DNA of 64,000 nucleotides, taken from positions 372,001 through 436,000 of the forward strand of contig NW_027141363.1 in the NCBI RefSeq assembly GCF_036365525.1. The letters run 5' to 3'. A program made the position numbers and the translations under genes. Below are positions 2,965 through 48,182 of this stretch, one piece after another. How positions within the stretch are numbered: position 1 is the stretch's first letter; each line of letters opens with the position of its first letter. Below the pieces are notes generated by a model that worked only from the letters and a program-made list of their open reading frames with translations, had not been told where the DNA came from and ran no database searches. The DNA is from Heterodontus francisci (Eukaryota).

Positions 2965-5900
2965 CTGATGTTCCAGACACCGCTGGGGTAGACGATGATC
3001 CCCTAGTGGATTCTCGAGTTGTTTGTTCCTCGGGTTCCTCAGTTGCGACAGTCTCTGGATCTGTAATAAAGGAAGAGGGCAGAGTGGAGAAAACCCGAAG
3101 AGCTCGTTTATTTAGTTCTCTAGTCCAGACAGTGTCAGATTTTCATCTTTATCAAACCCTCGAAGATCCTATCCAACTCCTCGTGAACATTGCTTCCTGG
3201 AGAGGGAGTGTGAGGTGCCCAGCACTGCAGTGGGGACCTGACGTGAGCCATGAACACTGCAGGGATCAGAGTGCCTGATAGACAGAGACAGCAGAGTCTG
3301 GTTCAGTTCCCTAGAGTTTCAGTGAAGTACACTTTGTGTTTCAGATCCTTTATTCACTGTGTCCCTTACAATAAGGAGGGGAGTGAGTAAACCGTCTCAT
3401 TTCTGTGGGTGACACGGGACATCCCAGAATCACCCTCTGGATGATATAGAAGCATCAATGTACCTGTACAATACGCAGCGCAATAAAACAAGGACTTCAA
3501 CTCATAAACGAAGTAACTGCTGCAGTTTTTGATCTTTATCTCATGGACCTTGTCGCAGTGTTTTCTACCCCAGGATAAACAAACTGTCCGTGTTACTTCC
3601 CCCTGTCCCACGCTGGGATGGGAACCTGAAATGAGAGTTTATAAATATTGAAGACTGTAACCCATGTGAACAGTGCTGGACAGTGAATGTAAATCTGATA
3701 TTCTCAAGGCTGAAATTACCATTTAACCAGCCTGTAACATGTGTGGAGCAGTGAAAATCTGGGACAGCAGTCTCCGGAATCTTCCATCCACCAGAACTGA
3801 AACAAAAATCACAGAGTCAGTCCCTGAACTGATGGCAAATATTAACTGTTAGAGAGACTGGTACCAGCAGATAGTACCAGAAGCTGGGGGAAATCCCTTA
3901 CTCTGCCCATATTGACTAGATTACCCTGAAATTGTTCCTTTACATTACCTTTTAAATCTGTACCATCCTTGAGCAAGATTATCATCACACTTCTCCTGAC
4001 CGGAGCACCCAGTGACATCACAATCGCTGCTCCTCCAGGGCTGGTCCAGGACTGTGTGATTTACACACGGGTCAGTGAGTGCAGAGTCTGTGACTGAGTG
4101 ACAGAAAGATGTTTAATGTTAATATGTGACCTTACATCAGAACTGGGAAAAGTTCTAGTGACAAGTGAAACCGGGGAGGATGTGATGATAAATGGAAGGG
4201 ATCACACTCCCCTCAGTTACCGTATCACACTCTCCTCAGTCACTGTATCCCACTCCCCACAGTCACTGTATCCCAATCCCCACAGTCACTGAATCACACT
4301 CCCCTGAGTCACTGCATGCCACTCCCCTCAGTCACTACACCCACTTCCCTCAATTACAGCATCCCACTCCCCTCACTCACTGCACCCACTCCCCTCAGTC
4401 AGTGCACCCACTCCCATCAGTCACTACATCCCACTCCCCTCAGTCACTACATCCCACTCCCCTCAGTCACTACATCTCACTGCCCTCAGTCACTGCATCC
4501 CTCTCCCCTTAGTCGCTGCATCCCACTCCCCTCAATTACTGCATCCAACTCCCCTCAATCACTGCATCCCACTTCTCTATGTCACTGTACCCACTCCACC
4601 GAATCACTCTATACCATTCCCTTCAGTCACTGCACCTCACTCCCCGCTTCTCTACATCCTACTCCCCTCAGTTACCACATCACACTCAGTAGTCACTACA
4701 TCCCACTTCCCTCAATTACAGCATCCCACTCCCCTTAGTCACTACATCCCACTCCCGTCAGTCACTGTATCCCACTCCCCTCAGTCTCTGTATCCCACTC
4801 CCCTCAGTCGCTACTTCCCACACCCCTGTCACTACACCCCACTCTCCTCAGTCACTACACCCCACTCTCCTCAGTCACTACATCCCACTCTCCTCAGTCA
4901 CTACATCCCACTCCCCTCAGTCACTACATCCCACTCCCCTCAGTCACTACATCCCACTCCCCACATTCACTGTATCCTACTCCACCTAGTCACCACATCT
5001 CATTCGCTCAGTCACTGTATCCCACTCCCCTCAGTCTCTGTATCCCACTCCCCTCAGTCGCTACTTCCCACTCCGCTCAATCACTGCATCCCACACCCCT
5101 CAGTCACTACCTCCCACTCCCCTGTCACTACACCCCACTCTCCTCAGTCACTACACCCCACTCTCCTCAGTCACTACATCCCACTCCCCTCAGTCACTAC
5201 ATCCCACTCCCCTCAGTCACTACATCCCACTCCCCACATTCACTGTATCCTACTCCACCTAGTCACCGCATCTCATTCGCTCAGTCACTACATCCCACTC
5301 CCCTCAGTCTCTGCAGACCACTCCTCTCAGTCACTGCAGCCCACTCCTTACCGAGCTAGCCGTGTCCTAAAAGACAAAGCTGCTAGTCTGGGACTGCGGT
5401 AGGTGATGACAGAACCAACAAGAGGAGAAAATATACTTGACTTCATCCTCACCAATCTGCCTGCCACATATCCATCTGTCCATGACAGTCTTGGTGGGAG
5501 TGACCACCGCACAGTCCTTGAGGATCCATTGAGGATACCGTCCATCGTGTTGTGTGACACTATCACCATGCTAAATGGGATAGATTCAAACAAGTCTAGC
5601 AATGCAACAATGGGCATCCATGAGGTGCTGTGGGAACAACAGCAGCAGCAGAATTGTACTCAACTACAATCTGTAACCTCATGGTCCGGTATATCCCCCA
5701 CTCGATCATGACCATCAAGCCAGGAGACCAAACCTGGTTCCATGAAGAATGCAGGAGGGCATGTAAAGTGCAGCACAAGGCATACCTCAAAATGAGGTGT
5801 CAGCCTGGTGAAGCTACAACACAGGACTATCTGCATGCCAAACAGCATAATTAGCATGCGATGGACAGAGCTAAGCGATCCCATAACCAACGGATCAAAT

Positions 5901-8900
5901 GAGTTCCGAAGAAGGGTCGCTGACCCGAAACGTTAACTTTGCTTCTCTTTCCACAGATGCTGCCAGACCCGCTGAGTGATTCCAGTATTTCTTGTCCTGC
6001 CACATCCAGTCGTGAATGGCAGTAGACAATTAAACAACTAACTGGAGGAGGTGGCCCCACAAATATCCCCATCCTCAATGATCAGGGAGCCCAGCACATC
6101 AGTGCAAAAGATAAGGCTGAAGCATTTGCAAAAATCTTCAGCCAGAAGTGCTGAGTTGATTATCCATCTCGACCTTCTCCTGCAATCCCCAGCATCACAG
6201 ATGTCAGTCTTCAGCCAATTCGATTCACTCCGCTTGATATCAAGAAATGACTGAAGGCACTGGATACTGCAAAGGCTATGGGCCCTGACAATATCCCGGA
6301 AGTAGTACTGAAGACCTGTGCTCCAGAACTTGTTGCATCCTTAGCCAAGCTGTTCCAGTACAGCTACAACACTGGCATCTACCCTGCAATGTGGAAAACT
6401 GCCCAGGCATGTCCTGTGCATAAAAAGCAGGACAAGTCAAAGCAGGGCAAGTTCAAGCCACCCAATTACCGTCCCATCAGTCTACTCTCTATCATCAGTA
6501 AAATGATGGAAGGTGTCGTTGACAGTGCTATCAAGCGGCACTTGCTCAGCAATTACCTGTTCAGTGATGGTCAGTTTGGGTTCCGCCAGGGTCACTCAGC
6601 TCCTGACCTCATTACAGTGTGGTTCAAACATGGACAAAAGAGCTGAACTCAAGAGGTGAGGTGAGAGTGTTTGCCCTTCACATAGAGTCTGTCAGGATCC
6701 TGCTGCTGTGTCTGACACTCACCAGAAAACCTGAATCTCCTCAATTGCAGACCTGACAGAATACTACCCAGACATGCCAGCCCTCTCTCCAGACAGTGAG
6801 CGTCTGGTTCAGTTCCCTAGAGTTTTAGTGAAGAGTTCACTCTGTTTTACAGATCCTATATTCACTGTGTCCCTTACAAAAAGGAGGGCAGTGAGTAAAC
6901 TGTCTCATTCCCATGGGTGACAAGGGACATCCCAGAATCACCCATCTGCACCATATACAAACAGCAATCTACCAGTGCAATAAACAGCGTTACAGTCGGG
7001 TGGAGGCTTCAACTCATAAACAAAATAACTGCTGCAGTTTATGATCTTTATTTCCTGGGTCCAGTGACAGCGATTTCCAGCCTTGTTAAAACAAACTGTC
7101 CTCGTTACTTCCCCCTGTCCCACACTGGGATGGGAACCTGAAATGAGAGTTTATAAACATTGAAGAAAGTAACCCACGTGAACAGTGCTGGACAGTGAAT
7201 GTAAATCTGATATTTTTAAGACGGAAATTACCCTGTAACCAGCCTGTGGCACGTGTGGAGCAGTGAAAATCTGGGACAACAGTGTCCGGAATCTTCCATC
7301 CACCAGAACTGAAACAATAATCACAGAGTCAGTCCCTGAACTGATGGTAAATATTAACTGTTAGAGAGACTGGTAACAACAGATAGTGCCAGAAACTGGG
7401 GGAAATCCATTACTCCTCCCTCATTAACTGATTTACCCAGAATTTGTTCCTTTACATTACCTTTTAAATCTGTACCATCCTTGAGCAAGATTATCATCAC
7501 ACTTCTCCTGACCGGAGCCCACAGTGACATCACAATCGATGCTCCTCCAGGGCTGGTCCAGGACTGTGTGATTTACACACGGGTCAGTGAGTGTGGAGTC
7601 TGTGACTGAGTGACAGAAAGATGTTTAATGTTAATATAAAGTACAGTTAATGTTACACAGCGCCTTGTACCCTCCCGAAATACCAATAATCTCAGTTTCA
7701 CCCTCCGCCCTGGGCAAAGCCCCGCAGATTAAAGATGGAAAATGTCCTCCTTCTCTAAACTGGGTTTCCATCTGTCTCCCAGCTCAGCCTCCCCCTCTAA
7801 CTCACTGCTCACAGACAGTCCTCCCGATTCTAGATTGACCACCAGCTCTCAGGTCACAGAAAGCAGTAAATATCTCAGCTTCACTTCATCCCAGTAGGAA
7901 AGATGTAAAGTGGAGGAGGAGCGAGAACTGCCAGGTGGAGCACAAGCGACCCAGTGTGACTGGTGGGTCCTGGAGAGGGAACGTGTAGTCTCAAAACCAA
8001 CAACAACCTGCGTTTATGTACTGCCTTTGATGTAATAAAATGTCCCAAAGCACTTCATCGGTGTGTTACCATCCCGAACTGACACCGATCCACAGAAGCA
8101 GCTGGTCGGGCAGGTGGCCAAATGCTCTGTCAAAGAGGTAGGTTTTAAGGAGTGTCTGAAAGGATGAAAGAGAGGAGGAGAGACAGAGAAGTTGAGGGCT
8201 AGAATTCCATAGCGTTAAGCCTCGGCAGGTGAAGGCACAGCTGCCAATGGTGGAAGGGATTCGAATCGGGAATATTCAAGAGGCCTGAATTAGAGGAGCG
8301 CAGAGATCTCCAAGGGTTGTGGGGCTGGAGATGATTTCAGAGGTAGGGAACGGCTAGGTGATAGAAGGATCTGGAAACGATTGTGAGAATATTGAAATCC
8401 AGGCCTTGCTGAACCGGGAGCCAGTGTAGGTCAGTGAGCACGGAGATGAAAGGTGAACGGGACTTGGGCAGTATCATACTGGATGACCAAAATGTACAGA
8501 AGGTGGAATGTGAGAGATCAGCCAGGAGATCTTTGGAATAGTCAAGTCTAGAGTTACCAAAGAACTGGTAAAGGGTTTGAGCAGCGGTGAAGCTGCAAGA
8601 GCCAAGTCAGGAATACCGTTTCTGATCATCCTTCTCGAATTGTCGGCAGTCTTTGACACAATTCACCACATTACCCTCTGCCAACACCTCTCCTTCCATG
8701 TCCAGCTGGGTGGAACTGCTCTGGCCTATTTCCACTCAACCCAGTCTAGTCTCAGCCAGAGAATCTCCTGCAGTGTCTTCCCTACCCACTCCAGCACTGT
8801 TACCTCTAGGGTACCCCGAGAATCTATCTTGTCCCTCTCCAATTTCTCATCAGCTTCCGACTGTGCCCAGCTTCCTTCACTGTAGCCTCCTCATCACAAG

Positions 8901-28099: not shown

Positions 28100-31000
28100 T
28101 CACACTTCCACAGGCTCACTAGCCGAGCACTGAACGTCTTCTGGATCCAATTCGAGCTTCGTGTGTGGACACTGATCCTGGAACATGTGCTTCACCTGCA
28201 TCGCAGAGAGGAGAAACGATGAATATTAATGCAAGGGGAGGAGTGAATAGAAAGAGACAGAGAGGATACAGACAGAGATCGGGAGAAAGGGTGGGGACAA
28301 GACAGTGAGAGACAGGGTGAGGCAAAGATACTCAGATAGAGGGAGAGATGGAGAGGGAGGTTAGGAGAGCTCCAGGGATTGAGACAGAGGTAGAGAAACA
28401 GAGGGTGTGAGAGCGAGAGGTCGTCAGAGATGCAGTGAGGGAGAGACAGGCACAGACAGCAAGAAAGACAAAGAAAGAGAAATACAGAGTGGGTGAGCGA
28501 GGCAGAGAAAGAGACAGAGATAGAAAGGACATAAAGCGAGAATGGGGAGAGTGAGAGGGAAGATCAGAGAGAGGTTACCATACAACGAGGAGGCCATTCA
28601 TCTCCTCGAGTCTGTTATACAGGAACAGGAGAGGCCATTCAACCCCTCGTTCGAGTTCTTACACGGGAACAGGAGAAGGCCATTCAGCCCCCTCACCCCC
28701 TCTCGAGCCTTTCACACAGGCTTAGGAGGAGGCCCATTCAGCCCCTCACAAGCCTGAACTGGGGACCAGAAGATAAGCAGAGGTGGAATTAGAGCTGTTT
28801 AAATATCTGAGCTGGAAATCCCATTCAGTGAATACAGACAGTGAGAGGGAGGATCTGTTGTCTCCCGTGTTTCTCCTCAGTACCGTGCAGTCTCTCACCC
28901 TCTCCACAACGATTCTCTTTGCAGTTTCATAATCCAGATCAGTCATTGAAGTGATCTTCACATTAATCCTCTTGTATTTGGTACCTAAACACAACAGTCA
29001 CAACATCAACAGGTTGAACACACCCAGAGTTTCGCACAGGGCACGGGACGTATTTCGAATGATCTCTCCTCTCTAATTTAAACTCTCTTTCCTCCAGTTT
29101 GTCATCCACTCGTTTGTTCATCTGTCTCTGTTATTCTCTCTATCTCAACTCGTCTTGTCTCTGATCTGCCCTCCCTGTGTTATCATCCTCTATCCTGCAC
29201 TCTCTTCTCTGTTGCCTCCTTGTTCCATCTCCCTAGATCATTTGCATTCCGTGTTTACTCCGGTCTCACTGCCCTTTACTCTGTCTCTGTCGATCACTCT
29301 CACTCTCTCTCTCTCTCTGATGCTCTCTGTCCCTCTGACAAAGACAAAGACAGAGAGACAAAGAGCATCTGTGAGAGAGAGAGAAAGTGAGAGTCAGAGA
29401 GACAGACAGGGAGACAGAACATCAGAGAGAGTGGGAGACAGAGTGAGGCGAAAGAGGGAGCTGGAGAAACTGAGAGCCACATAGAAGGAGAAAGGCGGCT
29501 ACAGAAATGAAATATATTTATATATGCGTGTGAAAGGCAGATAAAGGAGAAACAGAGCGACAGAGATAAAACTGAGAGTTACAGAGAGAGGGATGCGAGA
29601 TAGAAGCTCAAAGATATTTCTGAAGGAATTTCTGAAGGTTTACGTTTCAGTCTTTTCCCAATGATTCCACTCACACTGAATACAACGTGACTGCAACTCT
29701 TGTCCGACAGCACAGACAAGGCACAGAGAGAGAGAGAGAGAGAGAGAGAACGATGGGTTTTCCGACACAGAACGATCACACATCTGTTTGGAGACACTCT
29801 AACCTGATAGATTTGTGCCAGACTGAGACGGGAGGAGGGATTTCATATTCAGAAATGTGTAGAATCTGAAATGTTCCCACCGTCATCAGAAACAGGCTGG
29901 GAGTGGGAGGTTCCTCAGGAGTAGACGAGACCCCGAGTCTGAGAGGATCAAATAAAGACAAGAGGAATTTCACTGGGATTCGGAACGCTGGATGAGTGGA
30001 GGGAACTGTTTTCACACAGAACCTTTTCTCGTATGTAATCTCACTCCCTTTACACACTGAATCAATGTGTACCAGCCATTACCGAGGGGAGACACCAGAC
30101 ATCATTGTCTGCAGAATCAGTTACTACTCCGACAGGAAAAAAAACTAACAGAGAAAACTCGGCAGATTATCAAAGTGATCGGCAAAAGGAGAGGAAGAAT
30201 GCCGTGAGGGGGAAAGTGGAGTCAGAGAACAAGAGAGAGCAGGAGTGAGAGAGAAAAGCAGGGAGGGCGACAGGGGTGATAGGGAAAAGAGTGAGGGAGA
30301 TCTGTAGTGAGTGAGAGCAAGAGAGAGAAAAGAAAACAGCAGTGTAATGTTCCCCTTAATCAGTATTGATACCCCTCCTCCTTTCCTTCCTTCCCTCTCT
30401 TTCCTGAACACCTTGTAGTCAGGAATATTCACTGCCCAGTCCTGCCCCTCTTAGAGCCAGGACTCTGTTATTGCCACAACAACATATTTCCACATGGTTA
30501 TTTGCGCCTGCAGCTCACCAACCTTATTTAACACTCTCCGGGCATTCATATCCACACACATTAAACAGAAGTTAGAGGTTAATAACTTCCTTCTTACACT
30601 GACCCCATCTAATACGTTATTCTATTTTACTGCCTTGCAACCTGTCCCTCAGAATTCTCTATGCATCTGTGTCTTACTTTTTAATGTTGCTCGAATCCTG
30701 TTCTTCTTGATGGATATTAATGAGTTACACTTGTGTGTACAGGGCAGAATTTCATAATTTGTAGTGAGCACAAGACCTGGAAGTATTGTGAACAGTGAGG
30801 AGGAAAGTGATGGACTTCAAGTTGACATAGACAGACCTGTGGGATGGGCAAGCAAGTGGCAGATGAAATTTAATGCAGAGAATTGTGAAGTGATTCATTT
30901 TGGTAGGAAGAAGGAGGAGAGGCAATATAAAATAAAGGATACAATTGTAAAGGAGGTGCAGGGGCAGAGGTGGTAAGACATGTCGAGAGAGTAGTGAATA

Positions 31001-34000: not shown

Positions 34001-37000
34001 GACCTGGGCGTACGTGTGCACAAATCATTGAAGGTGGCAAGACAGAGAGCGGTGAATACTTAGGAAGGACGTTAATGTATTCGAGAGGGTGCGGAGATGA
34101 TTTACGAGAATGGTTCCCAGGATGAGGGACGTCAGTTACTTGGATAGATTGGAGAAGATGGGGCTGTTCTCCCTGGAGAAGAGAAGATTAAGAGAAGATT
34201 TGATCGAGGTGTTCAAAATCACGAGGGATGTGGACAGAGCTGACAGGGAGAAACTGTTCCCATTGGTGGTAGAATCCAGAACCAGAGGACACCGGTTTTA
34301 GGTGAGTGGTAAAAGTAGCAACAGAGACAGGAAAACCTTTTCACACAGCGAGTGGTTAGGGTCTGGAATGCACTGCCTGAGAGTGCGCTGGAGGCAGGTT
34401 CAATTGAGGCTTTCAAAAGGGAATTGGAAAATTATCATAGGAGAAACAGTCTGCTGGGTGATGGGGAAATGGCAGGAGTGCGAGTAGGTGGATTGCTCTG
34501 GCAGAGAGCTGGCACGGTGACGATGGGCTGAATGGCCTCTTTCTGTGCTGTAACCAGTCTCTGATTCCATCATTCTGTAATTATAGTCCGGCACGGCAGA
34601 TACCTGGGGTTCCAGAGCCCACTAGGATAGAGGATGAAACCTCAGTGGATTCTCCAGTCGATTGTTCCTCGGATTCCTGAGTTTGGGAAGTCATGGGCTC
34701 TGTTAGAAAGGGAGGCAAACATTGCAGAGTGAGAGATGGAGAAAAACACAACATTTCGACAGGATGGTACGAGTGTCAGGAGAAAGTGAGATATCAATCT
34801 TTATAAATCCATCATCTTCCATCCTTATCACTACATTACTGTATCCCACTCCCCTCAGTCACTGTATCCCACTCCCCTCAGTCGCTGTGTCCCATGCCCC
34901 TCAGTCGCTGTATCCCACTCCCCTCAGTCGCTTTTGCCCACTCCCCTCAGTCGCTGTATCCCACTCCCCTCAGTCACTGTATCACACTCCCCTCAGTCAC
35001 TGTATTACACTCCCCTCAGCCTGTGTAACCCACAACCCTCGGTCTCTACATTCCACTCCCCTCAGTCACCGCATCCCACTCCCATAGGTCACTACATCCC
35101 ACTCAGCTCCGTCAGTCTATCCCACTCCCCTCAGTCACTGCATCCCACCTCCCTCTGTCACTACATCCCACTACTCTCAGGCTCTAACTCGCACTCCCAC
35201 TTCCCTCAGTCACAACATCCCACTCCCTCAGTCAGGCCATCGCACTGCCCTCAGTCACGGCATCCCAAGCCCCTCCGTCACTGCCTCCCACTCTCCCTCA
35301 CTCTCTGGATCTAATATCAGTCACAGTATTCCACTCCCCTCATTCACTACAACTCACTCCCCTCAAACCTTTCACACAACTCCGCTCAGCCTCTCCATCC
35401 CAGTCCCCTCAGTCATTGCATCCCAATCACCTCCATCAGTCTATCCCACTCTTCTCAGTCACTACACCCCACCATCCTCTGCCATTACATTGCACTCCCC
35501 TTAGTCACGACATCCCACTCCCCTTAGTCAATGCATCCCACTCCCCTCAGTCAATGCATCCCACTGCCCTCAGTCACTGTGAGTGAGAGATAACGTGTGA
35601 GAGTTAGAGACAGTGAGAATGGGAGACAGAGTGAAAGAGGGCAACAGAGGGAGAGAAAAATGAGAAGAAAGAGAGCGATAGAAAATGTGAGAGATCAAGA
35701 AAGAGTCCGAGAGTGAGAGCAACAGATACAGACAGCGAGAGAAGAAGCGAAATGGGGAGAGCAGTGAGTTACAGAGATAAAGAGAGAGACAGAGGGAAAA
35801 CGAAATTGTCAGATAGAGATAGACAGAGACTAAGTGAAAATGGCAGACAGAGAGAGAGAGCAAATATAGAGATATAAAGAGAAAGATACACAGAGAGCAA
35901 AAGAGATACTGACAGGAAGTGCAGAAAGAGGCAGTGGGAGAGGAGGGTGGAGAGAGAGGGATAGAAAATAAAACAGTCACAAGTAAATCCAGTGGTGATT
36001 TCAGAGGAAGCCTCTTTACTCAAAAGTGCGTCACAGCCCTAGACTCATACAATTATACAGCATGGAAACAGGCCCTTCGGCCCATCGTGTCCATGCCGAT
36101 CATCAAGCACGTCGCTATTCTAATCCCATTTTCCAGCACTTGGCCCGTAATCATGTATGCTGCGGCGTTTCAAGTGCTTATCTAAATACTTATTAAATGT
36201 TGTGAGGGTTCATGCCTCTACCACCTCTTCAGACAGTGTGTTCCAGATTCCAACCACCCTCAGGGTGAAAATCTGTTTCCTCAAATCGCCTATAAACCTC
36301 TTGCCTTTTATCTTAAGTCTATTCCCCCTGGTTACTGACCCCTCCGCTAAGGGAAATAGTTTCTTCCAATCTAACCGATCAATGCCCCTTATAATTTTGT
36401 ATACCTCAATCAGGTCCCCCCTCAGCCTTCTCTGCTCTAAGGAAAACAACCATAGCCTAGCCAGCCTCTCTTAACAGCTGAAATGCTCCAGCCCAGGCAA
36501 CCTCCTGGTGAATCTCCTCTGCACCCTCTCCAGTGCAATCACATCCTTCCTATATTGTGGTGCCCAGAACTGTTCTCAGTACTCCAGCTGTGGCCAAACT
36601 AGCGTTTTGTACAGCTCCATCATAACCGCCCTGCTCTTATATTCTGTGCCTCGGCTAAGACAGGCAAGTATCCCATATACCTTCCAAACCACATGATCTA
36701 CCTGTGCTGCTGCCTTCAGTGAACTATGGACAAGTACACCAAGGTGTAGTGAGAATGTAGAATTAATCCTGAATTGTCCAGGGCAATGAAATTTGAGGTA
36801 AATCTGGTTAAACACCTGAAGGAGAAAGGAAAAGAGGGATAAGGTTGGATAAAGAGGAGTAGCAAGAGGGGCCGAGGGGCCTCTTACTGTGCGGTAGATT
36901 CCATTCACCCAAATCAGGCAGTCAGTGTAAGAATCTACCCGTCCTGCTTGATCAACACAAAACTGACACCTGAGGTGAAAGTATCGATTGGGTTAGATGG

Positions 37001-40000
37001 TGATTTCTCAATGGAGTGTGGAGTTGTTTGCTCCTTGGTTCTTGAGGTTGTTGAAGTCTCTGGATGTGTAATAAAGGGAAAGAAACATGGGGGAGAGCAG
37101 GAGTGAGAGGAAGCTCGAACTGGATAGATTAGAGTACAGTAAATCACAGATGCTAGTCTATATGAAAACCATTGTGAGACAATCCACTGTCCACACTCAC
37201 CGCATCCCAGTTGGCACAGGAACTGCATTACATTTTCCCCAGTCATAAAATGTCACTGCCCTCAGTCATTGCATCCCACTCCCCGCAATCACATCTTCTC
37301 AATCCCCTTAGTCACTAAATCCCACTCCCCTCAATTACATCATCCCACTCCCCTCCGTCACTGCATCCCACTCCCCTCTGTCACTGCATCCCACTCCCCT
37401 CAATTACTTCATCCCACTCCCCTCCTTCACTACATCCCAATCCCCTCAATTACATCATCCCACTCCCCTTAATCACTGCATGCCACTCCCCGCAGTCTCT
37501 ACATCCCACTCCCCTCAGTCACTACATCCCACTCCCCTCAATCACTACATCCCACTCCCCCTCAGTCACCCCATCCCACTCCCCTCAGTCACCCCATTCC
37601 ACTCCCCTCAGTCGCCCCATCCACTCCCCTCAGTCACTACATTCCACTCCCCTCAGTCACTCCATCACACTTCCCTCAGTAAGAGACTGGATGATCTCCA
37701 GGACTGATCTTCTATGATGTAACACTGGGTGTGGAATCTGTTTCGAATGGGCCCACAAGGGGGGTACCTGATGTTCCAGACACCGCTGGGGTAGACGATG
37801 ATCCCCTCGTGGATTCTCGAGTTGATTGTTCCTCGGGTTCCTCAGTTGTGGCAGTCTCTGGATCTGTAATAAAGGAAGAGGGCGGAGAGGAGGAAACCCG
37901 AAGAGCTCATGTATTTAGTACTCGAGTCCAGACAGTGTCAGATTTTCATCTTTATCAAACCCTCGACTATCCAATCTGACTCCTCGTGAACATTGTTTCC
38001 TGGAGAGGGAGTGTGAGGTATCCAGCACTGCAGTGGGGACCTGACGTGAGCCATGAACACTGCAGGGATCAGAGTGCCTGATAGACAGGGACAGCAGAGT
38101 TCAGTTCCCTAGAGTTTCAGTGAAGTACACTTTGTGTTTCAGACACTTTATTCACTGTGTCCCTTTCAATAAGGAGGGGAGCGAGTAAACTGTCTCATTT
38201 CGGTGGGTGACAAAGGACATCCCAGAATCACCCTCTGGATGATATAGAAGCATCAATGTACCTGTACAATACGCAGCGAAATGAAACAACGACTTCAACT
38301 CATAAACGAAGTAACTGTTGCAGTTTTTGATCTTTATCTCATGGACCTTGTAGCAGTGATTTGTACCCCAGTGTAAACAAACTGTCCGTGTTACTTCCCC
38401 CTCTCCCACGCTGGGATGGGAACCTGGAATGAGAATTTAGAAATATTGAATAATGTAACCCATGTGAACAGTGCTGGACAGTGAATGTAAATCTGATATT
38501 ATAAAGGCTGACAGTACCCTGTAACCAGCTTGTAACATGTGTGGAGCAGTGATGATGTGGGACAGCAGTCTCCGGAATCTTCCATCCACCAGAACTGAAA
38601 TAACAATCACAGAGTCAGTCCCTGAACTGATGGTAAATATTAACTGTTAGAGAGACTGGTACCATCAGATAGTACCAGAAGGTAGGGGAAATCCCTTATT
38701 CTGCCCATATTGACGAGATTACCCTGAAATTGTTCCTTTACATTACCTTTTAAATCGGTACCATCCGAAATGAAGACCATCATCACACTTCACCTGGCTG
38801 GAGCACCGAGTGTCATCACAATCGCTGCTCCTCCAGGGCTGGTCCAGGACTGTGTGATTTACACACGGGTCAGTGAGTGCAGAGTCTGTGACTGAGTGAC
38901 AGAAAGATGTTTAATGTTAATATGTGACCTTACATCAGAACTGGGAAAAGTTCAAGTGACAAGTGAAAGCGAGGAGGATGTGAAGATAAATGGAAGGGAT
39001 CACACACCCCTCAGTCACTGTATCCCATTCCCCTCAGTCACTGTATCCCAGTCCCCTCTGTCACTGTATCCCACTCCCCTCTGTCACTGTATCACACTCC
39101 CCTCAGCCACAGTATCACACTCCCCTCAGCCACTGTATCACACACCCCTCAGTCACTGTATCCCATTCCCCACAGTCACTGTATCACACTCCCCTCAGTC
39201 ACTGTATCCCATTCCCCTCAGTCACTGCATCCCACTTCCCTCAGTCTCTGTATCCCACTCCCCTCAGTCACTGTATCACACTCCCCTCAGTCACTGTATC
39301 CTACTCCCCTCAGTCACTGCATCCCACTCCCCTCAGCCACAGTATCACACACCCCTCAGCCACTGTATCACACTCCCCTCAGTCACTGTATCCCATTCCC
39401 CACAGTCACTGTATCACACGCCCCTCAGTCACTGTATCCCACTCCCCTCAGTCACTGCATCCCCCTCCCCTCAGTCACTGCATCCCACTCCCCTCAGTCA
39501 CTGCATCACACTCCCCTCAGTCACTGGATCCCACTCCACTCAGTCACTGGATGCCACTCCCACTCAGTCACTGGATGCCACTCCCCTCAGTCACTGCTTC
39601 CCACTCCCCTCAGTCACTGTATCACACTCCCCTCAGTCACTGTATCCCACTCCCCCCAGTCACTGTATCCCATTCCCCATAGTCACTGTATCACACTCCC
39701 CTCAGTCACTGTATCCCACTCCCCTCAGTCACTGCATCCCACTACCCTCAGTCACTGTATCCCACTCCCCTCAGTCACTGCTCCTACTACCCTCAATCAC
39801 TGCATCCCACTTCTCTATGTCACCACACCCAGTCCACCGAATCACTCTATAACATGCCCTTCATTCACTGCACCTCACTCCCCGCATCTTTACATCCTAC
39901 ACCCCTCAGTTACCACATCCTACTCATCAGTCACTGCATCCCACTACCCTCAGTCACTGTATCCCACTCCCATCAGTCACTACATCCTACTCCCCTCAGT

Positions 40001-43000
40001 CTCGTCATCCCACTCCCCTCAGTCACTGTACCCCACTCCCCTCAGTTACCACATCCTACTCATCAGTTACTGCATCCCACTTCCCTCAATTACAGCATCC
40101 CACTCCCTTCAGTCACTACATCCCACTCCCCTCAGTCACTGTATCCCACTCCCTTCAGTCACTACATCCCACTCCCCTCAGTCACTATACCCCACTCCCC
40201 TCAGTCACTACATCCCACTACCCTCAGTCACTGTATCCCACTCCCCTCAGTCACTGTATCCCCCTCCCCTCAGTCGCTACATCCCACTCCCCACATTCAC
40301 TGCATCCCACTCTCCTCAGTCACTACATCTCATTCCCCTCAGTCACTACATCCCACTGCCCTCAGTCGCTGCAGCCCACTCCTGACCGAGCTGCTAGTCT
40401 GGGACTGTGGCAGGTGATGACAGAACCAACAAGGGGAGAAAATATACTTGACGTCATCCTCACCAATCTGCCTGCCACATATCCATCTGCTGATGACAGT
40501 ATTGGTGGGAGTGACCACCGCACAGTCCTTGTGGAGACGAAGTCCCGCCTTCACATTGAGGATACCGTCCATCGTGTTGTGTGGCACTATCACCGTGCTG
40601 AATGGGATAGATTCAAACAAGTCTAGCAATGCAACAATGGGCATCCATGAGGTGCTGTGGGAACAACAGCAGCAGCAGAAATGTACTCAACCACAATCTG
40701 TAACCTCATGGTCCGGTATATCCCCCCACTCTATCATGACCATCAAGCCAGGAGACCAAACGTGGTTCAATGAAGAGTGCAGGAGGGCATGCAAAGTGCA
40801 GCACATGACAGACCTCAAAATGAGGTGTCAGCCTGGTGAAGCTACAACCCAGGACTATCTGCATGCCAAACAGCAGAAGCAGCATGTGATCGACAGAACT
40901 AAGCGATCCGATAACCAACGGATCAGATCTAAGCTCTGCAGTCCTGCGACATCCAGTCGTGAATGGCAGTAGACAATTAAACAACTAACTGGAGGAGGTG
41001 GCCCCACAAACATCCCCATCCTCAATGATCAGGGAGCCCAGCACATCAGTGCGAAAGATAAGGCTGAAGCATTTGCAAAATTCTTCAGCCAGAAGTGCCG
41101 AGTTGATGATACATCTCGGCCTTCTCCTGCAGTCCCAAGCATCACAGATGCCAGTCTTCAGCCAATTCGATTCACTCCGCTTGATATCAAGAAATGACTG
41201 AAGGCACTGGATACTGCAAAGGCTATGGGCCCTGACAATATCGCGGATGTACCTGTGCTCCAGAACTTGTTGCATCCTTAGCCAAGCTGTTCCAGTGCAG
41301 CTACAACACTGGCATCTACCCTGCAATGTGGAAAACTGCCCAGGCATGTCCTGTACATAAAAAGCAGGACAAGTCAAAGCAGGGCAAGTTCAACCCACCC
41401 AATTACCGTCCCATCAGTCTACTCTCTATCATCAGTAAAATGATGGAAGGTGTCGTTGACAGTGCTATCAAGTGGTACTTGCTCAGCAATTACCTGTTCA
41501 GTGATGGTCAGTTTGGGTTCCGCCGGGGTCACTCAGCACCTGACCTCATTACAGTGTGGTTCAAACATGGACAAAAGAGTGGAACTCAAGAGGTGAGGTG
41601 AGAGTGACTGCCCTTCACATAGAGTCTGTCAGGATCCTGCTGCTGTGTCTGACACTCACCAGAAAACCTGAATCTCCTCAATTGTAGACCTGACAGAATA
41701 CTACCCAGACATGCCAGCCCTCTCTCCAGACAGCGAGCGTCTGTTTCAGTTCCCTAGAGTTTTAGTGAAGAGTTCACTCTGTTTTACAGATCCTTTATTC
41801 ACTGTGTCCCTTACAAAAAGGAGGGCAGTGAGTAAACTGTCTCATTCCCATGGGTGACACGGGACATCCCAGAATCACCCATCTGCACCATATACAAACA
41901 GCAATCTACCTGTACAATAAGCAGCGTTACAGTCGGGTGGAGGCTTCAACTCATAAACAAAATAACTGCTGCAGTTTATGATCTTTATTTCCTGGGTCCA
42001 GTGACAGCGATTTCCAGCCTTGTTAAAACAAACTGTCCTCGTTACTTCCCCCTGTCCCACACTAGGATGGGAACCTGAAATGAGAGTTTATAAATATTGA
42101 AGAAAGTAACCCACGTGAACAGTGCTGGACAGTGAATGTAAATCTGATATTTTTAAGACGGAAATTACCCTGTAACCAGCCTGAGGCACGTGTGGAGCAG
42201 TGATACTGTGGGACAACAGTGTCCGGAATCTTCCATCCACCAGAACTGAAACAATAATCACAGAGTCAGTCCCTGAACTGATGGTAAATATTAACTGTTA
42301 GAGAGACTGGTAACAGCAGAGAGTACCAGAAACTGGGGGAAATCCATTACTCCTCCCTCATTAACTGATTTACCCAGAATTTGTTCCTTTACATTACCTT
42401 TTAAATCTGTACCATCCTTGAGCAAGATTATCATCACACTTCTCCTGACCGGAGCCCACAGTGACATCACAATCGATGCTCCTCCAAGGCTGGTCCAGGA
42501 CTGTGTGATTTACACACGGGTCAGTGAGTGTGGAGTCTGTGACTGAGTGACAGAAAGATGTTTAATGTTAATATAAAGTACAGTTAATGTTACACAGCGC
42601 CTTGTACCCTCCCGAAATACCAATAATCTCAGTTTCACCCTCCGCCCTGGGCAAAGCCCCGCAGATTAAAGCTGGAAAATGTCCTCCTTCTCTAAACTGG
42701 GTTTCCATCTGTCTCCCAGCTCAGCCTCCCCCTCTAACTCACTGCTCACAGACAGTCCTCCCGATTCTAGATTGACCACCAGCTCTCAGGTAACAGAAAG
42801 CAGTAAATATCTCAGCTTCACTTCATCCCAGTAGGAAAGATGTAAAGTGGAGGAGGAGCGAGAACTGCCAGGTGGAGCACAAGCCACCCAGTGTGACTGG
42901 TGGGTCCTGGAGAGGGAACGTGTAGTCTCAAAACCAACAACAACCTGCGTTTATGTAGAGCCTTTGATGTAATAAAATGTCCCAAAGCACTTCATCGGTG

Positions 43001-44504
43001 TGTTACCATCCCGAACTGACACCGATCCACAGAAGCAGCTGGTCGGGCAGGTGGCCAAATGCTCTGTCAAAGAGGTAGATTTTAAGGAGTGTCTGAAAGG
43101 ATGAAAGAGAGGTGGAGAGACGGAGAAGTTGAGGGAGAGAATTCCATAGCGTTAAGCCTCGGCAGGTGAAGGCACAGCTGCCAATGGTGGAAGGGATTCG
43201 AATCGGGAATACTCAAGAGGCCTGAATTAGAGGAGCGCAGAGATCTCCGAGGGTTGTGGGGCTGGAGATGATTTCAGCGGTAGGGAACGGCGAGGTGATA
43301 GAAGGATCTGGAAACAATTGTGAGAATATTGAAATCCAGGCCTTGCTGAACCGGGAGCCAGTGTAGGTCAGTGAGCACGGAGATGAAAGGTGAACTGGAC
43401 TTGGGCAGTATCATACTGGATGACCAAAATGTACAGAAGGTGGAATGTGAGAGATCAGCCAGGAGATCTTTGGAATAGTCAAGTCTAGAGGTACCAAAGT
43501 ACTGCTAAAGGGTTTGAGCAGCAGAGAAGCTGCAAGAGCCAAGTCAGGAATACTGTTTCTGATCATCCTTCTCGAATTGTCGGCAGTCTTTGACACAATT
43601 CACCACATTACCCTCTGCCAACACCTCTCCTTCCATGTCCAGCTGGGTGGAACTGCTCTGGCCTATTTCCACTCAACCCAGTCTAGTCTCAGCCAGAGAA
43701 TCTCCTGCAGTGTCTTCCCTACCCACTCCAGCACTGTTACCTCTAGGGTATCCCGAGAATCTATCTTGTCCCTCTCCAATTTCTCATCAGCTTCCGACTG
43801 TGCCCAGCTTCCTTCCCTGTAGCCTCCTCATCACAAGGACATCCAATTACAACCTCCGTAATATCCACCATCACTGATTTTGCCTCAGCCAATCCTCTAC
43901 CAAAAACCCTCAACCTTCTAGAGAATCAAATCTTCTAATCCACTCCTGGCCAGCCTCCCAGCTTCCACTTTCCAGAAGTCAGGTCTCCTCCAACACACTG
44001 CTGTTGTATGTTATCTTGCAGAAAGTTTAAGTCACACATCACCCCTGTGCTCTCTGACCCACATTGGTTCACAGCTGCAAACGCCTTTGATGTACAACTT
44101 CCATCTTCCTGTTCAAATTCTTTCATGACCTCTCCTCCCTCTCCCACCTCATTTCTGTAATCTTCACCAACTCTCTGTTTCTCTGACCCAAGCCTCCTGT
44201 AGAACTTCCCTCCACTCCCTTTCCTCCAGCAGTGTCTGATGTGGCTTCAAGATGTCTAGCCTCCTAAACCTTTCTGCCTCTCCACCTCCGTCTGCTTTTT
44301 TAAACTAACAGTCAGCCCTCCAATCATCTTCTTCCCCGCCGTGTCAGACATTTCTTCAATCAGATTTCTGTGGAACATCTTGGGAGATTATTCTATGTAA
44401 CGGTTTGAATAAACACAGCTTGTTCTAGTTGTACTGGGGGTGAACTTTGTCGAGAATGAAACTTACTCACTCAGGTAACCCAGAATGATCAGCAGATTCC
44501 ACAT
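28100..44504 (-). CDS. Complete multi-exon gene (copy B): secreted uromodulin/GP2-like tandem D10C (D8C) domain protein without ZP module, about 424 aa
   Basis: GT-AG exons, all in frame: 44504-44471 (MWNLLIILGYL); 42542-42398 (ITDSTLTDPCVNHTVLDQPWRSIDCDVTVGSGQEKCDDNLAQGWYRFK); 42245-42169 (SSGGWKIPDTVVPQYHCSTRASGWLQ); 42074-41910 (GSHPSVGQGEVTRTVCFNKAGNRCHWTQEIKIINCSSYFVYELKPPPDCNAAYCT); second D10C 38891-38747, 38594-38518, 38423-38262; 96-nt stalk exons 37863-37768, 34699-34604, 31641-31546; 28984-28899 (GTKYKRINVKITSMTDLDYETAKRIVVER); 28195-28100 (VKHMFQDQCPHTKLELDPEDVQCSASEPVEV*). The D10C motifs match UMOD/GP2 (DPC..LD..WRS, GWYRF, HP...G.V.R..C, YFVY.L..P..C..YCT). Confidence 0.85.
30330..32820 (+). 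repeat. Intragenic duplication unit (CR1 debris + stalk exon + minisatellite), repeated at about 33370-35580
   Basis: Same CR1 pieces and junctions precede the stalk exons at 31546-31641 and 34604-34699. Confidence 0.88.
31770..32785. repeat. 23-bp minisatellite array
   Basis: Same unit (GTATCACAC variant); follows a stalk exon. Confidence 0.95.
34835..35580. repeat. 23-bp minisatellite array
   Basis: Same unit. Confidence 0.93.
36040..36745 (-). mobile_element. CR1 3' fragment in a stalk intron
   Basis: FSLEQRRLRGDLIEVYKI, LYKTLV.PQLEY. Confidence 0.85.
36970..37065 (-). pseudogene. Degenerate fourth 96-nt stalk exon with its acceptor mutated (ttattacAC instead of ttattacAG)
   Basis: Open frame PETSTTSRTKEQTTPHSIEKSPSNPIDTFTS, homologous to the other stalk exons and exactly 96 nt; GT donor present, AG absent. 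Confidence 0.7.
37252..37680. repeat. 23-bp minisatellite array
   Basis: Same unit; positional equivalent of the much longer array at 1-2876. Confidence 0.93.
39000..40382. repeat. 23-bp minisatellite array (copy B, between D10C blocks)
   Basis: Same unit. Confidence 0.95.
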
Positions 44505-44967
44505 CTTACTGGCTGAGATTCTGGAAAGGGAAACACAAGACAAACATTTGAGAGAGATTACCGAGTAGGGAATTGGAGGGAATATTAAATATGGAGTTGC
44601 CGAGGAGTTCGTCAGTATATCTGTTCAGAGTGGTGAGCTCCATCTAATTATCTCTCTCTCACTGGGACTCTTACAGACAGAGGTGAGCTCAGCTACATGT
44701 TCTTGTTAAACATCAGGAACTTGACTCCAATCTTTCACCCTTTCCACTCTCCAAAGCTTTTATGAATAATTGCATGTGTTCCTGACTCTCTCCTCCAGGT
44801 CTGTCTCCTGCATCCCTGTAACGAACCTCTTTGAATTTCTGGCAAAGGTTATGACTGAAGATGGTGTTGTTTCAGGAGAAGCAGGACACACACCCCCTGG
44901 GTCAACACCTAGCAAGTGACAAACTCCTTTGCTTTTTCTAACAGGCCTCCCATACCCAACTGCTTAC

Positions 44968-45160
44968 CAGAGTCTCCAATGGAGGTGTCACTGGGTGGGA
45001 GATGTTGTCGGTTCAATTCCAGCTGCTTGCTCCTCAGTCTTGGGTCCACTCTGCTGTGAACAGTGTCAATCTCAGTGACAGCTCCAACCCCTATATACAC
45101 CACGGCGGATTGACTGCATTGCTGGTTGGCTGAAATATTTACATTTAGTCATGATGAATG
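44968..45160 (-). promoter_or_regulatory. Putative promoter and non-coding exon 1 of copy B
   Basis: TATATA at 45097-45092 and donor CTG|gtaagc at 44968/44967, both conserved with copy A. Confidence 0.55.
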
Positions 45161-47534: not shown

Positions 47535-48182
47535 TCCCTGTCTCTGTAACCTCCTCCAGCCCCTACAACCCTCCCTATCTCTGTAACCTCCTCCAGCTCC
47601 TCCAATCCTCCCTATGTCTGTATCCTGCTTAAGGTACTGCAACCCTCCCTATCTCCGTAACCCCCTCCAGCCCCCTACAAGCTTCCCTGTTTCAGTAACC
47701 TCCTCCTGACCCGACAACGCTCCCTATCGATGTAACCCCCTCCAGCCCCCAACAAACTTCCTTATTTCTGTAACTTCGTCCAGCCCCGACAACCCTCCCT
47801 ATCTCTGTTCCCTCCTCCAGCCCCCACAATCTTCCCTATCTCTGTAACCTTCTCCAGCCCAACAACCCTCCCTGTCTCTGTAACCTCCTCCAGCCCCGAC
47901 AATCCTCTCTATCTCTGAAACCTCCTCTAGCCCTACTACCCTCCCTATCTCTGTAACATCCTCCATCCCTACAACCCTCCCTATCTCTGTAACTTCCTCC
48001 AGCCCCTACAATACTCCCTATCTCTGTCACCTCCTCCAGCCCTACAACCCTCCCTATCGCTGTAACCTCCTCCAGACCTACAACCCTTCCTATCTCTGTA
48101 ACTTCCTCCAGCACCTACAATACTCCCTTTCACTGTAACCTCCTCCAGCCCTACAACCCTCCCTATCTCTGTAACCTCCTCC
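47535..48182. repeat. About 37-bp minisatellite, paralog of 12600-13868
   Basis: Same unit, shorter array. Confidence 0.9.

What the first reader, a model, noticed from the sequence alone, without database searches (positions are those of the whole stretch)
38262..38891. D10C domain 2 is hyper-diverged between paralogs while domain 1 and introns are nearly identical
Hand count, copy A versus B: domain 1 differs at 4 residues (DF/QY, T/S, V/A). Domain 2 differs at 19: V/D, G/R, G/S, E/V, N/G, A/H, Q/F; D/H, F/H, G/S, N/Q; Q/E, S/H, R/T, K/N, D/Y, S/N, Y/H, C/F. Very few silent changes are visible. The changes cluster in loops (DNLAQ/DGLHF, SWGRKHCD/HWGTNHCY). Inference: diversifying selection on a ligand-contacting surface, implying the protein surface and not only the glycan is under pathogen pressure.
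Basis: partly seen in the sequence, partly recalled or inferred. Interest (0 to 1): 0.78.

Follow-up and report, generated by a model that had tools for sequence, protein, structure and literature searches.

The report
Mosaic variable shark D10C head domain
The second uromodulin/GP2-like head domain of two neighbouring shark gene copies really differs at 19 residues, but much of this comes from an older, patchwork history of sequence exchange among family members, so pathogen-driven selection is possible but not shown.

Summary
Window 38262-38891 (minus strand) is the three-exon second D10C domain (B_d2) of an intact secreted, ZP-less tandem-D10C stalk gene. Its closest database relatives are Heterodontus francisci proteins. 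A ~35 kb segmental duplicate (copy A) lies in the same window.

The counts hold: 19 amino-acid differences in domain 2 against 4 in domain 1, 3.5 silent changes in domain 2, and clustered positions.

The baseline is wrong. Domain 2's own introns differ by 5.6%, against 1.7% around domain 1, which lies in a ~3.3 kb tract where A and B differ by only 2.1%. Coding and non-coding divergence stand in the same ratio (1.40) in both domains.

- Omega for domain 2 is 1.9-2.3, not significantly above 1 (p 0.13-0.22).
- A gene-conversion tract links A_d2 exon a to domain 1 (p < 0.0002).
- 15 of 19 B states recur in another horn-shark paralog (P0160), and other paralogs are mosaics.
- The changes avoid conserved positions (1 of 19, p 0.0004), so this is not random decay.
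- The beta-hairpin tip shows a local non-synonymous excess over introns (p 0.006-0.03).

Verdict: a hypervariable surface shuffled among paralogs. Selection is plausible but unproven. The scan had already noted this family on other DNA of this genome.

The parts
38747..38891 (-). B_d2 exon a (domain residues 1-47; carries the DPCVNHT sequon and the variable loop 26-41)
   Evidence: 4-way alignment and exon mapping. AG/GT borders are visible.
38518..38594 (-). B_d2 exon b (residues 49-73; HH at 61-62, S70, Q73)
38262..38423 (-). B_d2 exon c (residues 75-127). Pfam D8C_UMOD 29.6 bits against a cut-off of 27.
38757..38813 (-). Segment of B_d2 exon a with 13 B-unique nucleotides in 57 (alignment columns 156-212). 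The matching A_d2 segment is 3959-4015, where A_d2 equals domain 1.
   Evidence: Sawyer-type run of 11 sites between A_d2 and d1, 0 of 5000 permutations reach it.
38350..38373 (-). Codons 91-98 of B_d2 (HWGTNHCY), the tip of the betaE-betaF hairpin between canonical Cys 5 and Cys 7. It is the most variable patch of the family.
   Evidence: The equivalent UMOD region is the Bence Jones protein epitope (PMC8930769 passages).
38278..38280 (-). Codon 122 of B_d2, TTC (Phe) where A_d2 and both d1 have Cys. This is loss of canonical Cys 9, whose partner Cys 2 is kept.
   Evidence: The same F is in P0160.
3464..4093 (-). A_d2, three exons (a 3949-4093, b 3720-3796, c 3464-3625). Its translation matches the d2 of database protein P0157 at all 125 compared positions.
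41910..42542 (-). B_d1, three exons (a 42398-42542, b 42169-42245, c 41910-42074)
6973..7605 (-). A_d1, three exons (a 7461-7605, b 7232-7308, c 6973-7137)
41300..44600 (.). Low-divergence A/B tract (matches A 6363-9666). It has 69 mismatches in 3300 aligned bases (2.1%) and holds d1, intron 1 and the signal-peptide exon.
   Evidence: my sum of its rows. Flanks are 4.7-11.5%.
44472..44504 (-). Signal-peptide exon of gene B (MWNLLIILGYL). Gene A's is at 9538-9570.
   Evidence: An RNA-like contig joins this type of exon to an exon a.
37769..37863 (-). First acidic Ser/Thr stalk exon of gene B (approximate 5' border). It differs from copy A at 3 of 31 residues.
28133..28982 (-). Two tail exons of gene B (28893-28982 and 28133-28195, the latter ending in a stop)
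39007..40382 (.). 23-nt satellite array in the intron between B_d1 and B_d2. With the array at 37254-37680 it brackets the d2 plus stalk-exon block.

Best explanation
The stretch is the second D10C (uromodulin/GP2-type) head domain of gene B. Gene B is an intact member of a tandemly duplicated shark family of secreted, ZP-less double-D10C proteins on an acidic stalk. Its 19 differences from copy A are mainly a product of mosaic family history, not of a burst of new substitutions. (1) Shown: A and B differ unevenly along the duplicate. Domain 1 lies in a ~3.3 kb tract with 2.1% divergence, and I infer that A and B were homogenised there recently. Domain 2 lies in a block with 5.6-8% divergence, introns included. 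(2) Shown: A_d2 exon a carries a domain-1 conversion tract. B_d2 keeps a d2-type cassette (GLHF) that is also found in a more distant paralog. (3) Shown: A-type and B-type d2 each recur in other horn-shark paralogs, and further paralogs combine their cassettes. (4) Shown: the differences fall almost only on positions that vary across the whole shark and ray family. These lie next to canonical Cys 2, Cys 4, Cys 5-7 and Cys 9. (5) Inferred: these patches form one surface at the disulfide-rich pole of the domain, away from the glycan groove. Variation there is generated by point change and spread by short conversion tracts. It is tolerated, or favoured, because it changes what the head binds.
For: Divergence along the duplicate. 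Non-coding divergence is 26/465 in the d2 unit and 8/468 in the d1 unit. Per-300-nt profile: 0.7-3.3% around d1, 4.3-8.0% in the d2 block, 10-12.7% further upstream. The coding versus non-coding odds ratio is 1.40 in both domains. Scaling d1's 4 differences by the intron ratio gives 13.1 expected against 19 seen, p 0.07. The neighbouring stalk exon also differs at 3 of 31 residues. Conversion and mosaicism. With d1 as outgroup the asymmetry is the same in exons (19 B-unique, 4 A-unique) and non-coding DNA (17 against 3; Fisher p 1.0). B-unique sites are clustered (runs test p 0.0005). A_d2 and d1 share a run of 11 of 145 polymorphic sites, reached by 0 of 5000 permutations; B_d2 and d1 show no such run (p 0.68-0.80). 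Between d1 and d2, exon a dS is 0.035-0.17 and exon c dS is 0.63-0.71. B states shared: P0160_d2 15 of 19, P0009_d2 6, P0030 5, P0163 3. A_d2 shares 12 of 19 states with its own d1. All four combinations of the exon-a cassette (AQ or HF) and the hairpin cassette (RK or xN) exist among the paralogs. Position of the changes and intactness. Mean entropy at changed positions is 2.68 bits against 1.38 (p 6e-7). Only 1 of 19 changes falls in the 51 positions that are at least 80% conserved (p 0.0004). Gene B has signal, d1, d2, stalk and tail exons with no stop in d2.
Against: Omega point estimates are above 1 (1.87, 2.3), and the N:S split differs between d2 (about 25:4) and d1 (5:4) at p 0.04-0.07. 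The hairpin tip has 3 to 4.5 times the intron divergence (p 0.006-0.03). So selection may contribute more than I allow. The conversion tract in A_d2 is interrupted by two d2-type sites (the G-C codons). B-unique non-coding sites are interspersed with shared sites, so one simple tract does not explain the long B branch. I had no DNA of the other paralogs, so the direction and dates of exchange rest on protein states. P0157 and P0160 lie on other contigs of the public assembly, and I could not rule out that they are haplotypic copies of A and B. P0160's d1 does differ from B_d1 at 7 of about 80 residues.
Confidence: 0.6

Rival explanations
1. One reading: after the A/B duplication, positive diversifying selection on a ligand-contacting protein surface drove many new amino-acid replacements in domain 2. 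Domain 1 stayed under purifying selection.
For: Omega is 1.87 (NG86) and 2.3 (ML) for d2, against 0.33-0.37 for d1. Without the exon-a tract, exons b and c have 15 N changes in 186 sites and 1 S change in 48. Hairpin tip: 5/20 against 26/465 in introns, p 0.006. Several positions have three or more states among paralogs. Changes avoid the conserved core. Between d1 and d2 the hairpin dN (0.74-0.84) exceeds the dS of the rest of exon c (0.42-0.51).
Against: No test of omega > 1 is significant (p 0.13-0.22; N versus introns p 0.066 one-sided). 15 of 19 B states are already in P0160 and 12 of 19 A states are in A's own d1. So most are not new since the duplication. The same B-heavy asymmetry is seen in introns (17 against 3), which protein selection cannot explain. 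d1's non-synonymous rate (5/298) equals its intron rate (8/468), so d1 shows no clear purifying selection between A and B either. Multi-nucleotide cassette changes inflate omega.
Confidence: 0.2
2. B_d2 is under relaxed constraint or is decaying. Loss of canonical Cys 9 and of two glycosylation sequons marks a head domain that no longer functions, so its exons drift at the intron rate.
For: Coding nucleotide divergence is about equal to or slightly above non-coding (odds ratio 1.40, p 0.26). C122F removes the partner of Cys 2. S109N destroys the N-C-S sequon, and B lacks the N73-G-S sequon of A. No contig of three RNA-like runs covered the B-specific parts of exons a and b at 95% likeness.
Against: Only 1 of 19 changes hits one of the 51 conserved positions, where 7.6 are expected (p 0.0004). 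There are no stops or frameshifts, and the splice sites are intact. The same F122 is kept in a second intact paralog, P0160. 64 of 131 family domains lack Cys 9 and 15 of 131 have nine cysteines, so this disulfide is labile in the family. d1 shows the same coding to non-coding ratio. Contigs cannot show absence.
Confidence: 0.1
3. B_d2 (exons and introns) was overwritten by a conversion from a more diverged B-type paralog such as the P0160 locus. On this reading the long B branch is imported and A_d2 is the unaltered copy.
For: Exons a and b of B_d2 translate identically to P0160's d2. The B branch is long in both exons and introns. The d2 block is bounded by satellite arrays.
Against: The flanks of the d2 block are equally diverged between A and B (6-8.7%). 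So no imported tract is needed to explain 5.6%. The only significant run links A_d2 to d1. I had no DNA of P0160 to test this.
Confidence: 0.15

Closest known systems
D10C domain of the human GP2 / uromodulin decoy module (PDB 7p6r, 7p6s, 7p6t, 7pfp, 7q3n)
   Same: Same fold and family. Pfam D8C_UMOD matches exon c. A profile of the four exon c peptides hits UMOD and GP2 at E 1e-9. The AF2 model of P0157 superposes on 7p6r at 1.3 A over 125 columns with 41% identity. The DPCxN[HY]T sequon of GP2 N65 is kept in all four domains. Canonical Cys 1, 2, 4, 5, 7, 8, 9 and 10 align.
   Different: There is no ZP module, no EGF IV and no N-terminal beta-hairpin. There are two heads in tandem on an acidic stalk. 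Canonical Cys 3 and 6 are absent, and there is an extra Cys pair at positions 24/29. B_d2 also lacks Cys 9, and d1 lacks Cys 29. The UMOD N275 sequon position is FVYELK here, with no sequon.
Zebrafish omcin family (PMC11415648; abstract, outline and three passages read)
   Same: It is a lineage-specific, tandemly expanded cluster of UMOD/GP2-like genes with variable numbers of D10C domains, linked to defence against bacteria.
   Different: Omc5 has five D10C domains plus EGF IV and a ZP module and is predicted to be GPI-anchored. The shark genes have no ZP module or anchor. The terms 'positive selection' and 'gene conversion' do not occur in its main text.
Tandem immune-type multigene families whose binding loops are shuffled by gene conversion (for example MHC peptide-binding exons). 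Recalled from general knowledge, not from a call.
   Same: Hypervariable patches on a conserved scaffold, cassette-like sharing of motifs among paralogs, uneven divergence along duplicates, and exon divergence exceeding that of neighbouring introns.
   Different: A different fold, no known ligand, and no population data. Selection is not demonstrated here.

Membership tests
D10C / D8C domain (UMOD, GP2, OIT3; Pfam PF23283) | Sequence match to the family profile | tested here: met
   B_d2 exon c alone scores 29.6 bits against a cut-off of 27. A_d2 exon c (20.7) and A_d1 exon c (26.0) are below the cut-off as fragments. Exons a and b alone give no hit. The profile of the four exon c peptides hits UMOD and GP2 at E 1.5e-9 to 2e-8. 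Full-length relatives carry PF23283.
D10C / D8C domain (UMOD, GP2, OIT3; Pfam PF23283) | D10C fold | tested here: met
   The AF2 model of P0157 has block-mean pLDDT mostly above 90 over the two heads (mean 83.3 overall). P0157's d2 matches the A_d2 exon translations at all 125 compared positions. Foldseek gives GP2 7p6r at rmsd 1.3 A over 125 columns, TM 0.85. The B-type domain itself was not modelled.
D10C / D8C domain (UMOD, GP2, OIT3; Pfam PF23283) | Ten conserved cysteines paired C1-C8, C2-C9, C3-C6, C4-C10, C5-C7 (PMC8930769 passage) | tested here: not met
   Alignment to GP2 and UMOD: C3 and C6 are absent in all four window domains, and positions 24/29 carry an extra pair. A_d2 has 8 canonical plus 2 extra cysteines. 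B_d2 lacks C9. d1 lacks the extra Cys 29. Pairing itself was not tested.
GP2/UMOD bipartite decoy module | N-glycan sequon in the groove (GP2 N65 or UMOD N275) | tested here: met
   DPCVNHT aligns with GP2 DPCQNYT in all four domains. The UMOD N275 position has no sequon. Glycan type is not testable here.
GP2/UMOD bipartite decoy module | Disulfide-stabilised beta-hairpin packed against D10C | tested here: not met
   Only about 7 residues without Cys separate the signal peptide from DPC in d1, and d2 follows d1's last Cys directly.
UMOD/GP2 filament proteins | EGF IV plus ZP polymerisation module | tested here: not met
   The relatives' precomputed Pfam lists show only PF23283. Gene B's exons are signal, d1, d2, stalk and a short tail.
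Locus under positive diversifying selection | dN/dS significantly above 1 | tested here: inconclusive
   Omega is 1.87 (NG86) and 2.3 (ML). LRT against 1 is 2.1-2.2, p 0.13-0.15. Fisher N versus S p 0.22; N versus introns p 0.066; hairpin tip versus introns p 0.006-0.03. Only one pair of sequences was available.
Locus under positive diversifying selection | The signal survives removal of gene-conversion tracts | tested here: inconclusive
   Exons b and c only: N 15/186 against S 1/48 (p 0.20), and against introns p 0.16 one-sided.
Multigene family evolving by gene conversion (concerted or mosaic evolution) | Significant shared tracts, uneven divergence, and recombinant combinations among paralogs | tested here: met
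   Run of 11 of 145 sites between A_d2 and d1, 0 of 5000 permutations. Runs test p 0.0005. d1-d2 dS is 0.035-0.17 in exon a and 0.63-0.71 in exon c. A/B divergence is 2.1% to 11.5% along the duplicate. All four cassette combinations occur among horn-shark paralogs.

The most novel reading that the evidence does not exclude
The shark ZP-less double-D10C genes are a germline-diversified recognition family. A hypervariable protein surface sits at the disulfide-rich pole of the D10C head, made of the loop before Cys 2, the dipeptide before Cys 4, the betaE-betaF hairpin tip and the residue before Cys 9. This surface is assembled from cassettes exchanged among tandem paralogs and between the two heads of one gene. 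Selection keeps islands of divergence (exon c) against the homogenisation that erases differences in the introns. On this reading the protein surface, and not only the conserved N-glycan at the GP2 N65 position, takes part in binding microbes or other ligands.
Probability: 0.22. Interest if true: 0.75.

Novelty: new member of a known kind. Interest (0 to 1): 0.42.

Why it matters
D10C heads are known as carriers of a decoy glycan for bacterial FimH. In three literature searches I found no published work that treats the D10C protein surface as a variable recognition surface, and none on D8C/D10C genes of sharks. This pair of copies shows that the family has defined hypervariable patches on a strictly conserved scaffold, and that these patches move between paralogs as cassettes. 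If selection is later shown, it would point to a protein-based binding function of D10C heads in early jawed vertebrates. It would also give a concrete set of residues to test. As it stands, the finding is mainly a caution. A contrast between two domains of duplicated genes can come from different conversion histories, and the introns of one domain are not a neutral baseline for the other.

Tried and rejected
So multi-paralog codon site models, intron trees and dating were not possible.

RNA evidence. Three runs of one sample are guessed to be RNA and are kept as contigs. They cover only exonic parts and show exon-exon continuations: signal exon to an exon a, exon a to b, d1 exon c to d2 exon a, stalk exon 1 to a stalk repeat, and stalk exon 1 to the tail. 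The pieces come from conserved segments or carry d1-type or A-type letters. None covers the B-specific parts of exon a (38757-38813) or of exon b. Expression of gene B is therefore neither shown nor excluded.

- Loop enrichment by DSSP class was not significant (13 of 19 against 70 of 127, p 0.16).
- I could not compute solvent exposure or 3D clustering, because model coordinates are not given to scripts. The claim that the patches share one pole is an inference from sequence adjacency to Cys 2, 4, 5-7 and 9 and from the text of PMC8930769.
- I tried to polarise positions 38-41 with two-domain proteins of other sharks and rays (9 proteins). This failed: d1 and d2 are not orthologous across species, and in two of the nine proteins they are identical (P0169) or nearly identical (P0167) at the loop segments printed.
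- Random decay of B_d2 is rejected as the main cause. An assembly artefact was considered and not tested.
- Extended Data figures and supplementary tables of PMC8930769 were not seen (supplements are closed). They may hold a residue-level conservation map that bears on the surface claim.
- Papers. PMC8930769: abstract start and passages. PMC11415648: abstract, outline and passages. bioRxiv 10.1101/2025.05.09.653020: abstract start and six passages, nothing on variable D10C surfaces. PMC12212870: search listing only.
Full report
WHAT IS THERE. The gene lies on the minus strand. A masked self-comparison of the window shows a segmental duplication: copy A at about 2877-16083 and copy B at about 37681-53404, with an offset near 35 kb. 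Each copy holds two units of about 830 nt that are 85-88% alike. Each unit has three exons with AG/GT borders and compatible phases. The finding's coordinates, 38262-38891, run exactly from the start of exon a to the end of exon c of the second unit of copy B (B_d2).

Exon c matches Pfam D8C_UMOD (B_d2 29.6 bits, cut-off 27). A profile of the four exon c peptides hits uromodulin and GP2 structures at E 1.5e-9 to 2e-8. A profile search of 1.84 billion representatives found 1644 proteins at E up to 0.001, many with several such domains. The closest are annotated 'uncharacterized protein' of Heterodontus francisci, the horn shark.

Gene B is complete in the window. It has a signal-peptide exon (44504-44472), d1, d2, three acidic Ser/Thr stalk exons and two tail exons ending in a stop. 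There is no stop or frameshift in d2. Gene A runs off the window after its first stalk exon.

THE OBSERVATION. A_d2 and B_d2 differ at 19 of 127 residues, and A_d1 and B_d1 at 4. Nei-Gojobori counts for d2 are 3.5 synonymous and 24.5 non-synonymous differences, plus one more non-synonymous change for the Cys/Phe codon that the DNA alignment split. For d1 they are 4 and 5. The changed positions are clustered: 17 of 19 have a changed neighbour within 3 residues (p 0.01).

The statement that introns are nearly identical is true only for domain 1. Inside the d1 unit 8 of 468 non-coding sites differ (1.7%). Inside the d2 unit 26 of 465 differ (5.6%).

A 300-nt profile of the whole duplicate gives these values; the sums are mine, from its rows:
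- Tract around d1 (A 6363-9666): 0.7-3.3% per bin, 69 of 3300 in all.
- Beyond that tract (A 9667-12373): 128 of 2700, or 4.7%.
- d2 block, including a stalk exon: 4.3-8.0% per bin.
- Upstream block (A 13869-15404): 10-12.7% per bin.

So domain 1 lies in the least diverged tract of the duplicate and domain 2 outside it. The ratio of coding to non-coding nucleotide divergence is 1.40 in both domains. Scaling d1's four differences by the intron ratio predicts 13.1 differences in d2, against 19 seen (Poisson p 0.07).

TESTS OF SELECTION. Omega for the d2 pair is 1.87 (NG86). It is 2.3 under a pairwise codon likelihood model, with a likelihood-ratio statistic against omega = 1 of 2.1-2.2 (p 0.13-0.15). 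For d1, omega is 0.33-0.37 (p 0.13-0.17).

One-sided Fisher tests give:
- N against S: p 0.22.
- N against the unit's introns: p 0.066.
- N against S plus introns: p 0.055.
- Exons b and c only, against introns: p 0.16.
- N:S split between d2 and d1: p 0.04-0.07.

For residues 90-101 the p value is 0.03.

GENE CONVERSION AND MOSAIC ANCESTRY. I used the two d1 units as outgroup. In exons, 19 differences are unique to B_d2 and 4 to A_d2. In non-coding DNA the split is the same, 17 against 3 (Fisher p 1.0). Selection on the protein cannot produce that asymmetry in introns.

B-unique sites are clustered (runs test p 0.0005). Thirteen of them lie in 57 nt of exon a, where A_d2 equals d1. A Sawyer-type test finds a run of 11 of 145 polymorphic sites identical between A_d2 and d1. 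None of 5000 permutations reaches it, and B_d2 shows no such run. Between d1 and d2, dS is 0.035-0.17 in exon a but 0.63-0.71 in exon c. The 5' part of the unit has therefore been homogenised between the two heads, and further in A than in B.

Five other horn-shark proteins add the family view:
- P0157's d2 matches A_d2 at all 125 compared positions.
- P0160's d2 shares 15 of 19 B states, including Phe 122. Its d1 differs from B_d1 at 7 of about 80 residues, so I take it for another locus.
- P0009's d2, a more distant paralog, has the B cassette GLHF and also N95 and Y98.
- P0030 combines HF and HH (B states) with RK and D (A states).
- P0163 combines AQ (A state) with N95 (B state).
- A_d2 shares 12 of 19 states with its own d1.

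All four combinations of the exon-a cassette and the hairpin cassette exist. Most of the 19 differences are therefore older than the A/B pair, or were moved in as cassettes.

NOT RANDOM DECAY. I aligned 130 distinct D10C domains from 88 non-Heterodontus proteins. The 19 changed positions have mean entropy 2.68 bits against 1.38 for the rest (p 6e-7). Only 1 of 19 falls in the 51 positions that are at least 80% conserved (p 0.0004).

The Cys-to-Phe change removes canonical Cys 9, whose partner in GP2 is Cys 2 (PMC8930769 passage; alignment). However, 64 of 131 family domains lack this cysteine, mostly together with Cys 2. Fifteen of 131 have nine cysteines. The window's d1 also has an odd count. 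So this is weak evidence of loss of function. A caveat applies: cassettes copied from working paralogs would also spare conserved positions.

STRUCTURE. An AF2 model of P0157 has mean pLDDT 83.3, with block means mostly above 90 over the two heads. It superposes on the GP2 decoy module 7p6r at 1.3 A over 125 columns.

The changed residues lie in four places:
- The long loop before canonical Cys 2 (residues 26-41).
- Just before Cys 4 (61-62).
- The tip of the betaE-betaF hairpin between Cys 5 and Cys 7 (91-98). In uromodulin this region is the Bence Jones protein epitope.
- Next to Cys 9 (121-122).

The paper places a disulfide-rich region at the end of D10C opposite the glycan groove. I infer that the patches share that pole, away from the conserved DPCVNHT sequon that aligns with GP2 N65. 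I could not test this with coordinates.

The shark domains lack canonical Cys 3 and 6 and have an extra pair at positions 24/29. The copies also differ in sequons. A_d2 alone has N73-G-S, at the position of UMOD N232 and GP2 N122. B_d2 alone has lost N107-C-S.

EXPRESSION. Contigs of three runs of one sample, guessed to be RNA, lie only on exonic parts and continue across exon junctions. They come from conserved or non-B segments, and the B-specific parts are not covered. The family is transcribed and spliced in that sample. Gene B itself is undecided.

VERDICT. The numbers are right and the baseline is not. The best reading (about 0.6) has three parts. Domain 1 was recently homogenised between A and B. 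Domain 2 keeps an older divergence between two d2 types that recur in the family. Short conversion tracts, one of them significant, move loop cassettes between heads and paralogs. The variable patches are real and fall on defined, family-variable positions. Diversifying selection on them is plausible, locally suggested, and unproven. Random decay is unlikely.

The scan had already noted this gene family on other pieces of the same genome, and I did not test those notes. I found no published study of shark D8C/D10C genes in three searches. The nearest described case is the zebrafish omcin cluster, which keeps the ZP module.

Noticed in passing
window 1-2876, 4201-5347, 12719-13868, 31809-32760, 34838-35579, 37254-37680, 39007-40382, 47535-48182: Arrays of a 23-nt satellite fill the introns of both gene copies. 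They bracket the block that holds d2 and the first stalk exon. They may mark or promote exchange, but the drop in A/B divergence starts 700-1000 bp beyond the array, not at it.
   Followed up: partly
window 6363-9666 and 41300-44600: A tract of about 3.3 kb where copies A and B differ by only 2.1%, inside a duplicate that otherwise differs by 4.7-11.5%. It covers d1, intron 1 and the signal-peptide exon, and looks like a recent A/B homogenisation.
   Followed up: partly
window 6973-7137 / 3464-3625 and 41910-42074 / 38262-38423 (exon c of d1 and d2): Between d1 and d2, synonymous sites of exon c outside the hairpin are more diverged (6 of 19 and 7 of 19) than the flanking introns (54 of 465 and 65 of 460; p 0.02 and 0.015). 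The hairpin dN is 0.74-0.84. This is an island of divergence, as expected if homogenising exon c is selected against, but the counts are small.
   Followed up: partly
window 7461-7605 and 42398-42542 (d1 exon a); 3949-4093 and 38747-38891 (d2 exon a): The shark domains lack canonical Cys 3 and Cys 6 of GP2/UMOD and carry an extra pair at domain positions 24 and 29. Both d1 copies have lost Cys 29 (V-G instead of G-C). So d1 has nine cysteines, as B_d2 does.
   Followed up: partly
window 3721-3723 (A_d2 codon 73) and 38317-38319 (B_d2 codon 109): Glycosylation sequons differ between the copies. A_d2 (and P0157) alone has N-G-S at the position of UMOD N232 / GP2 N122. B_d2 alone has lost the family's N-C-S sequon at Cys 8.
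   Followed up: partly
window 37764-37768: RNA-like contigs continue from the first stalk exon either straight into the tail exon (KYKRINVKIT) or into a stalk repeat exon (EPMTS...). So short-stalk and long-stalk forms are both transcribed in the family.
   Followed up: no
window 38925-38952: Many 31-letter contigs of all three runs, with depths up to 235 among the pieces listed, lie on this intronic spot just upstream of B_d2 exon a, each with one other letter. It is probably a short repeat that is abundant elsewhere. Unexplained.
   Followed up: no
window 27011-27226: The last 72 residues of the annotated protein P0160 match this stretch at 92%, downstream of gene B's stop codon. The public gene model probably reads into a repeat or a neighbouring element.
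   Followed up: no
proteins P0167 (Heptranchias) and P0169 (Cetorhinus): In these two-domain relatives d1 and d2 carry identical (P0169) or nearly identical (P0167) residues at the variable-loop segments printed. This suggests that homogenisation between the two heads of one gene is common in the family.
   Followed up: no
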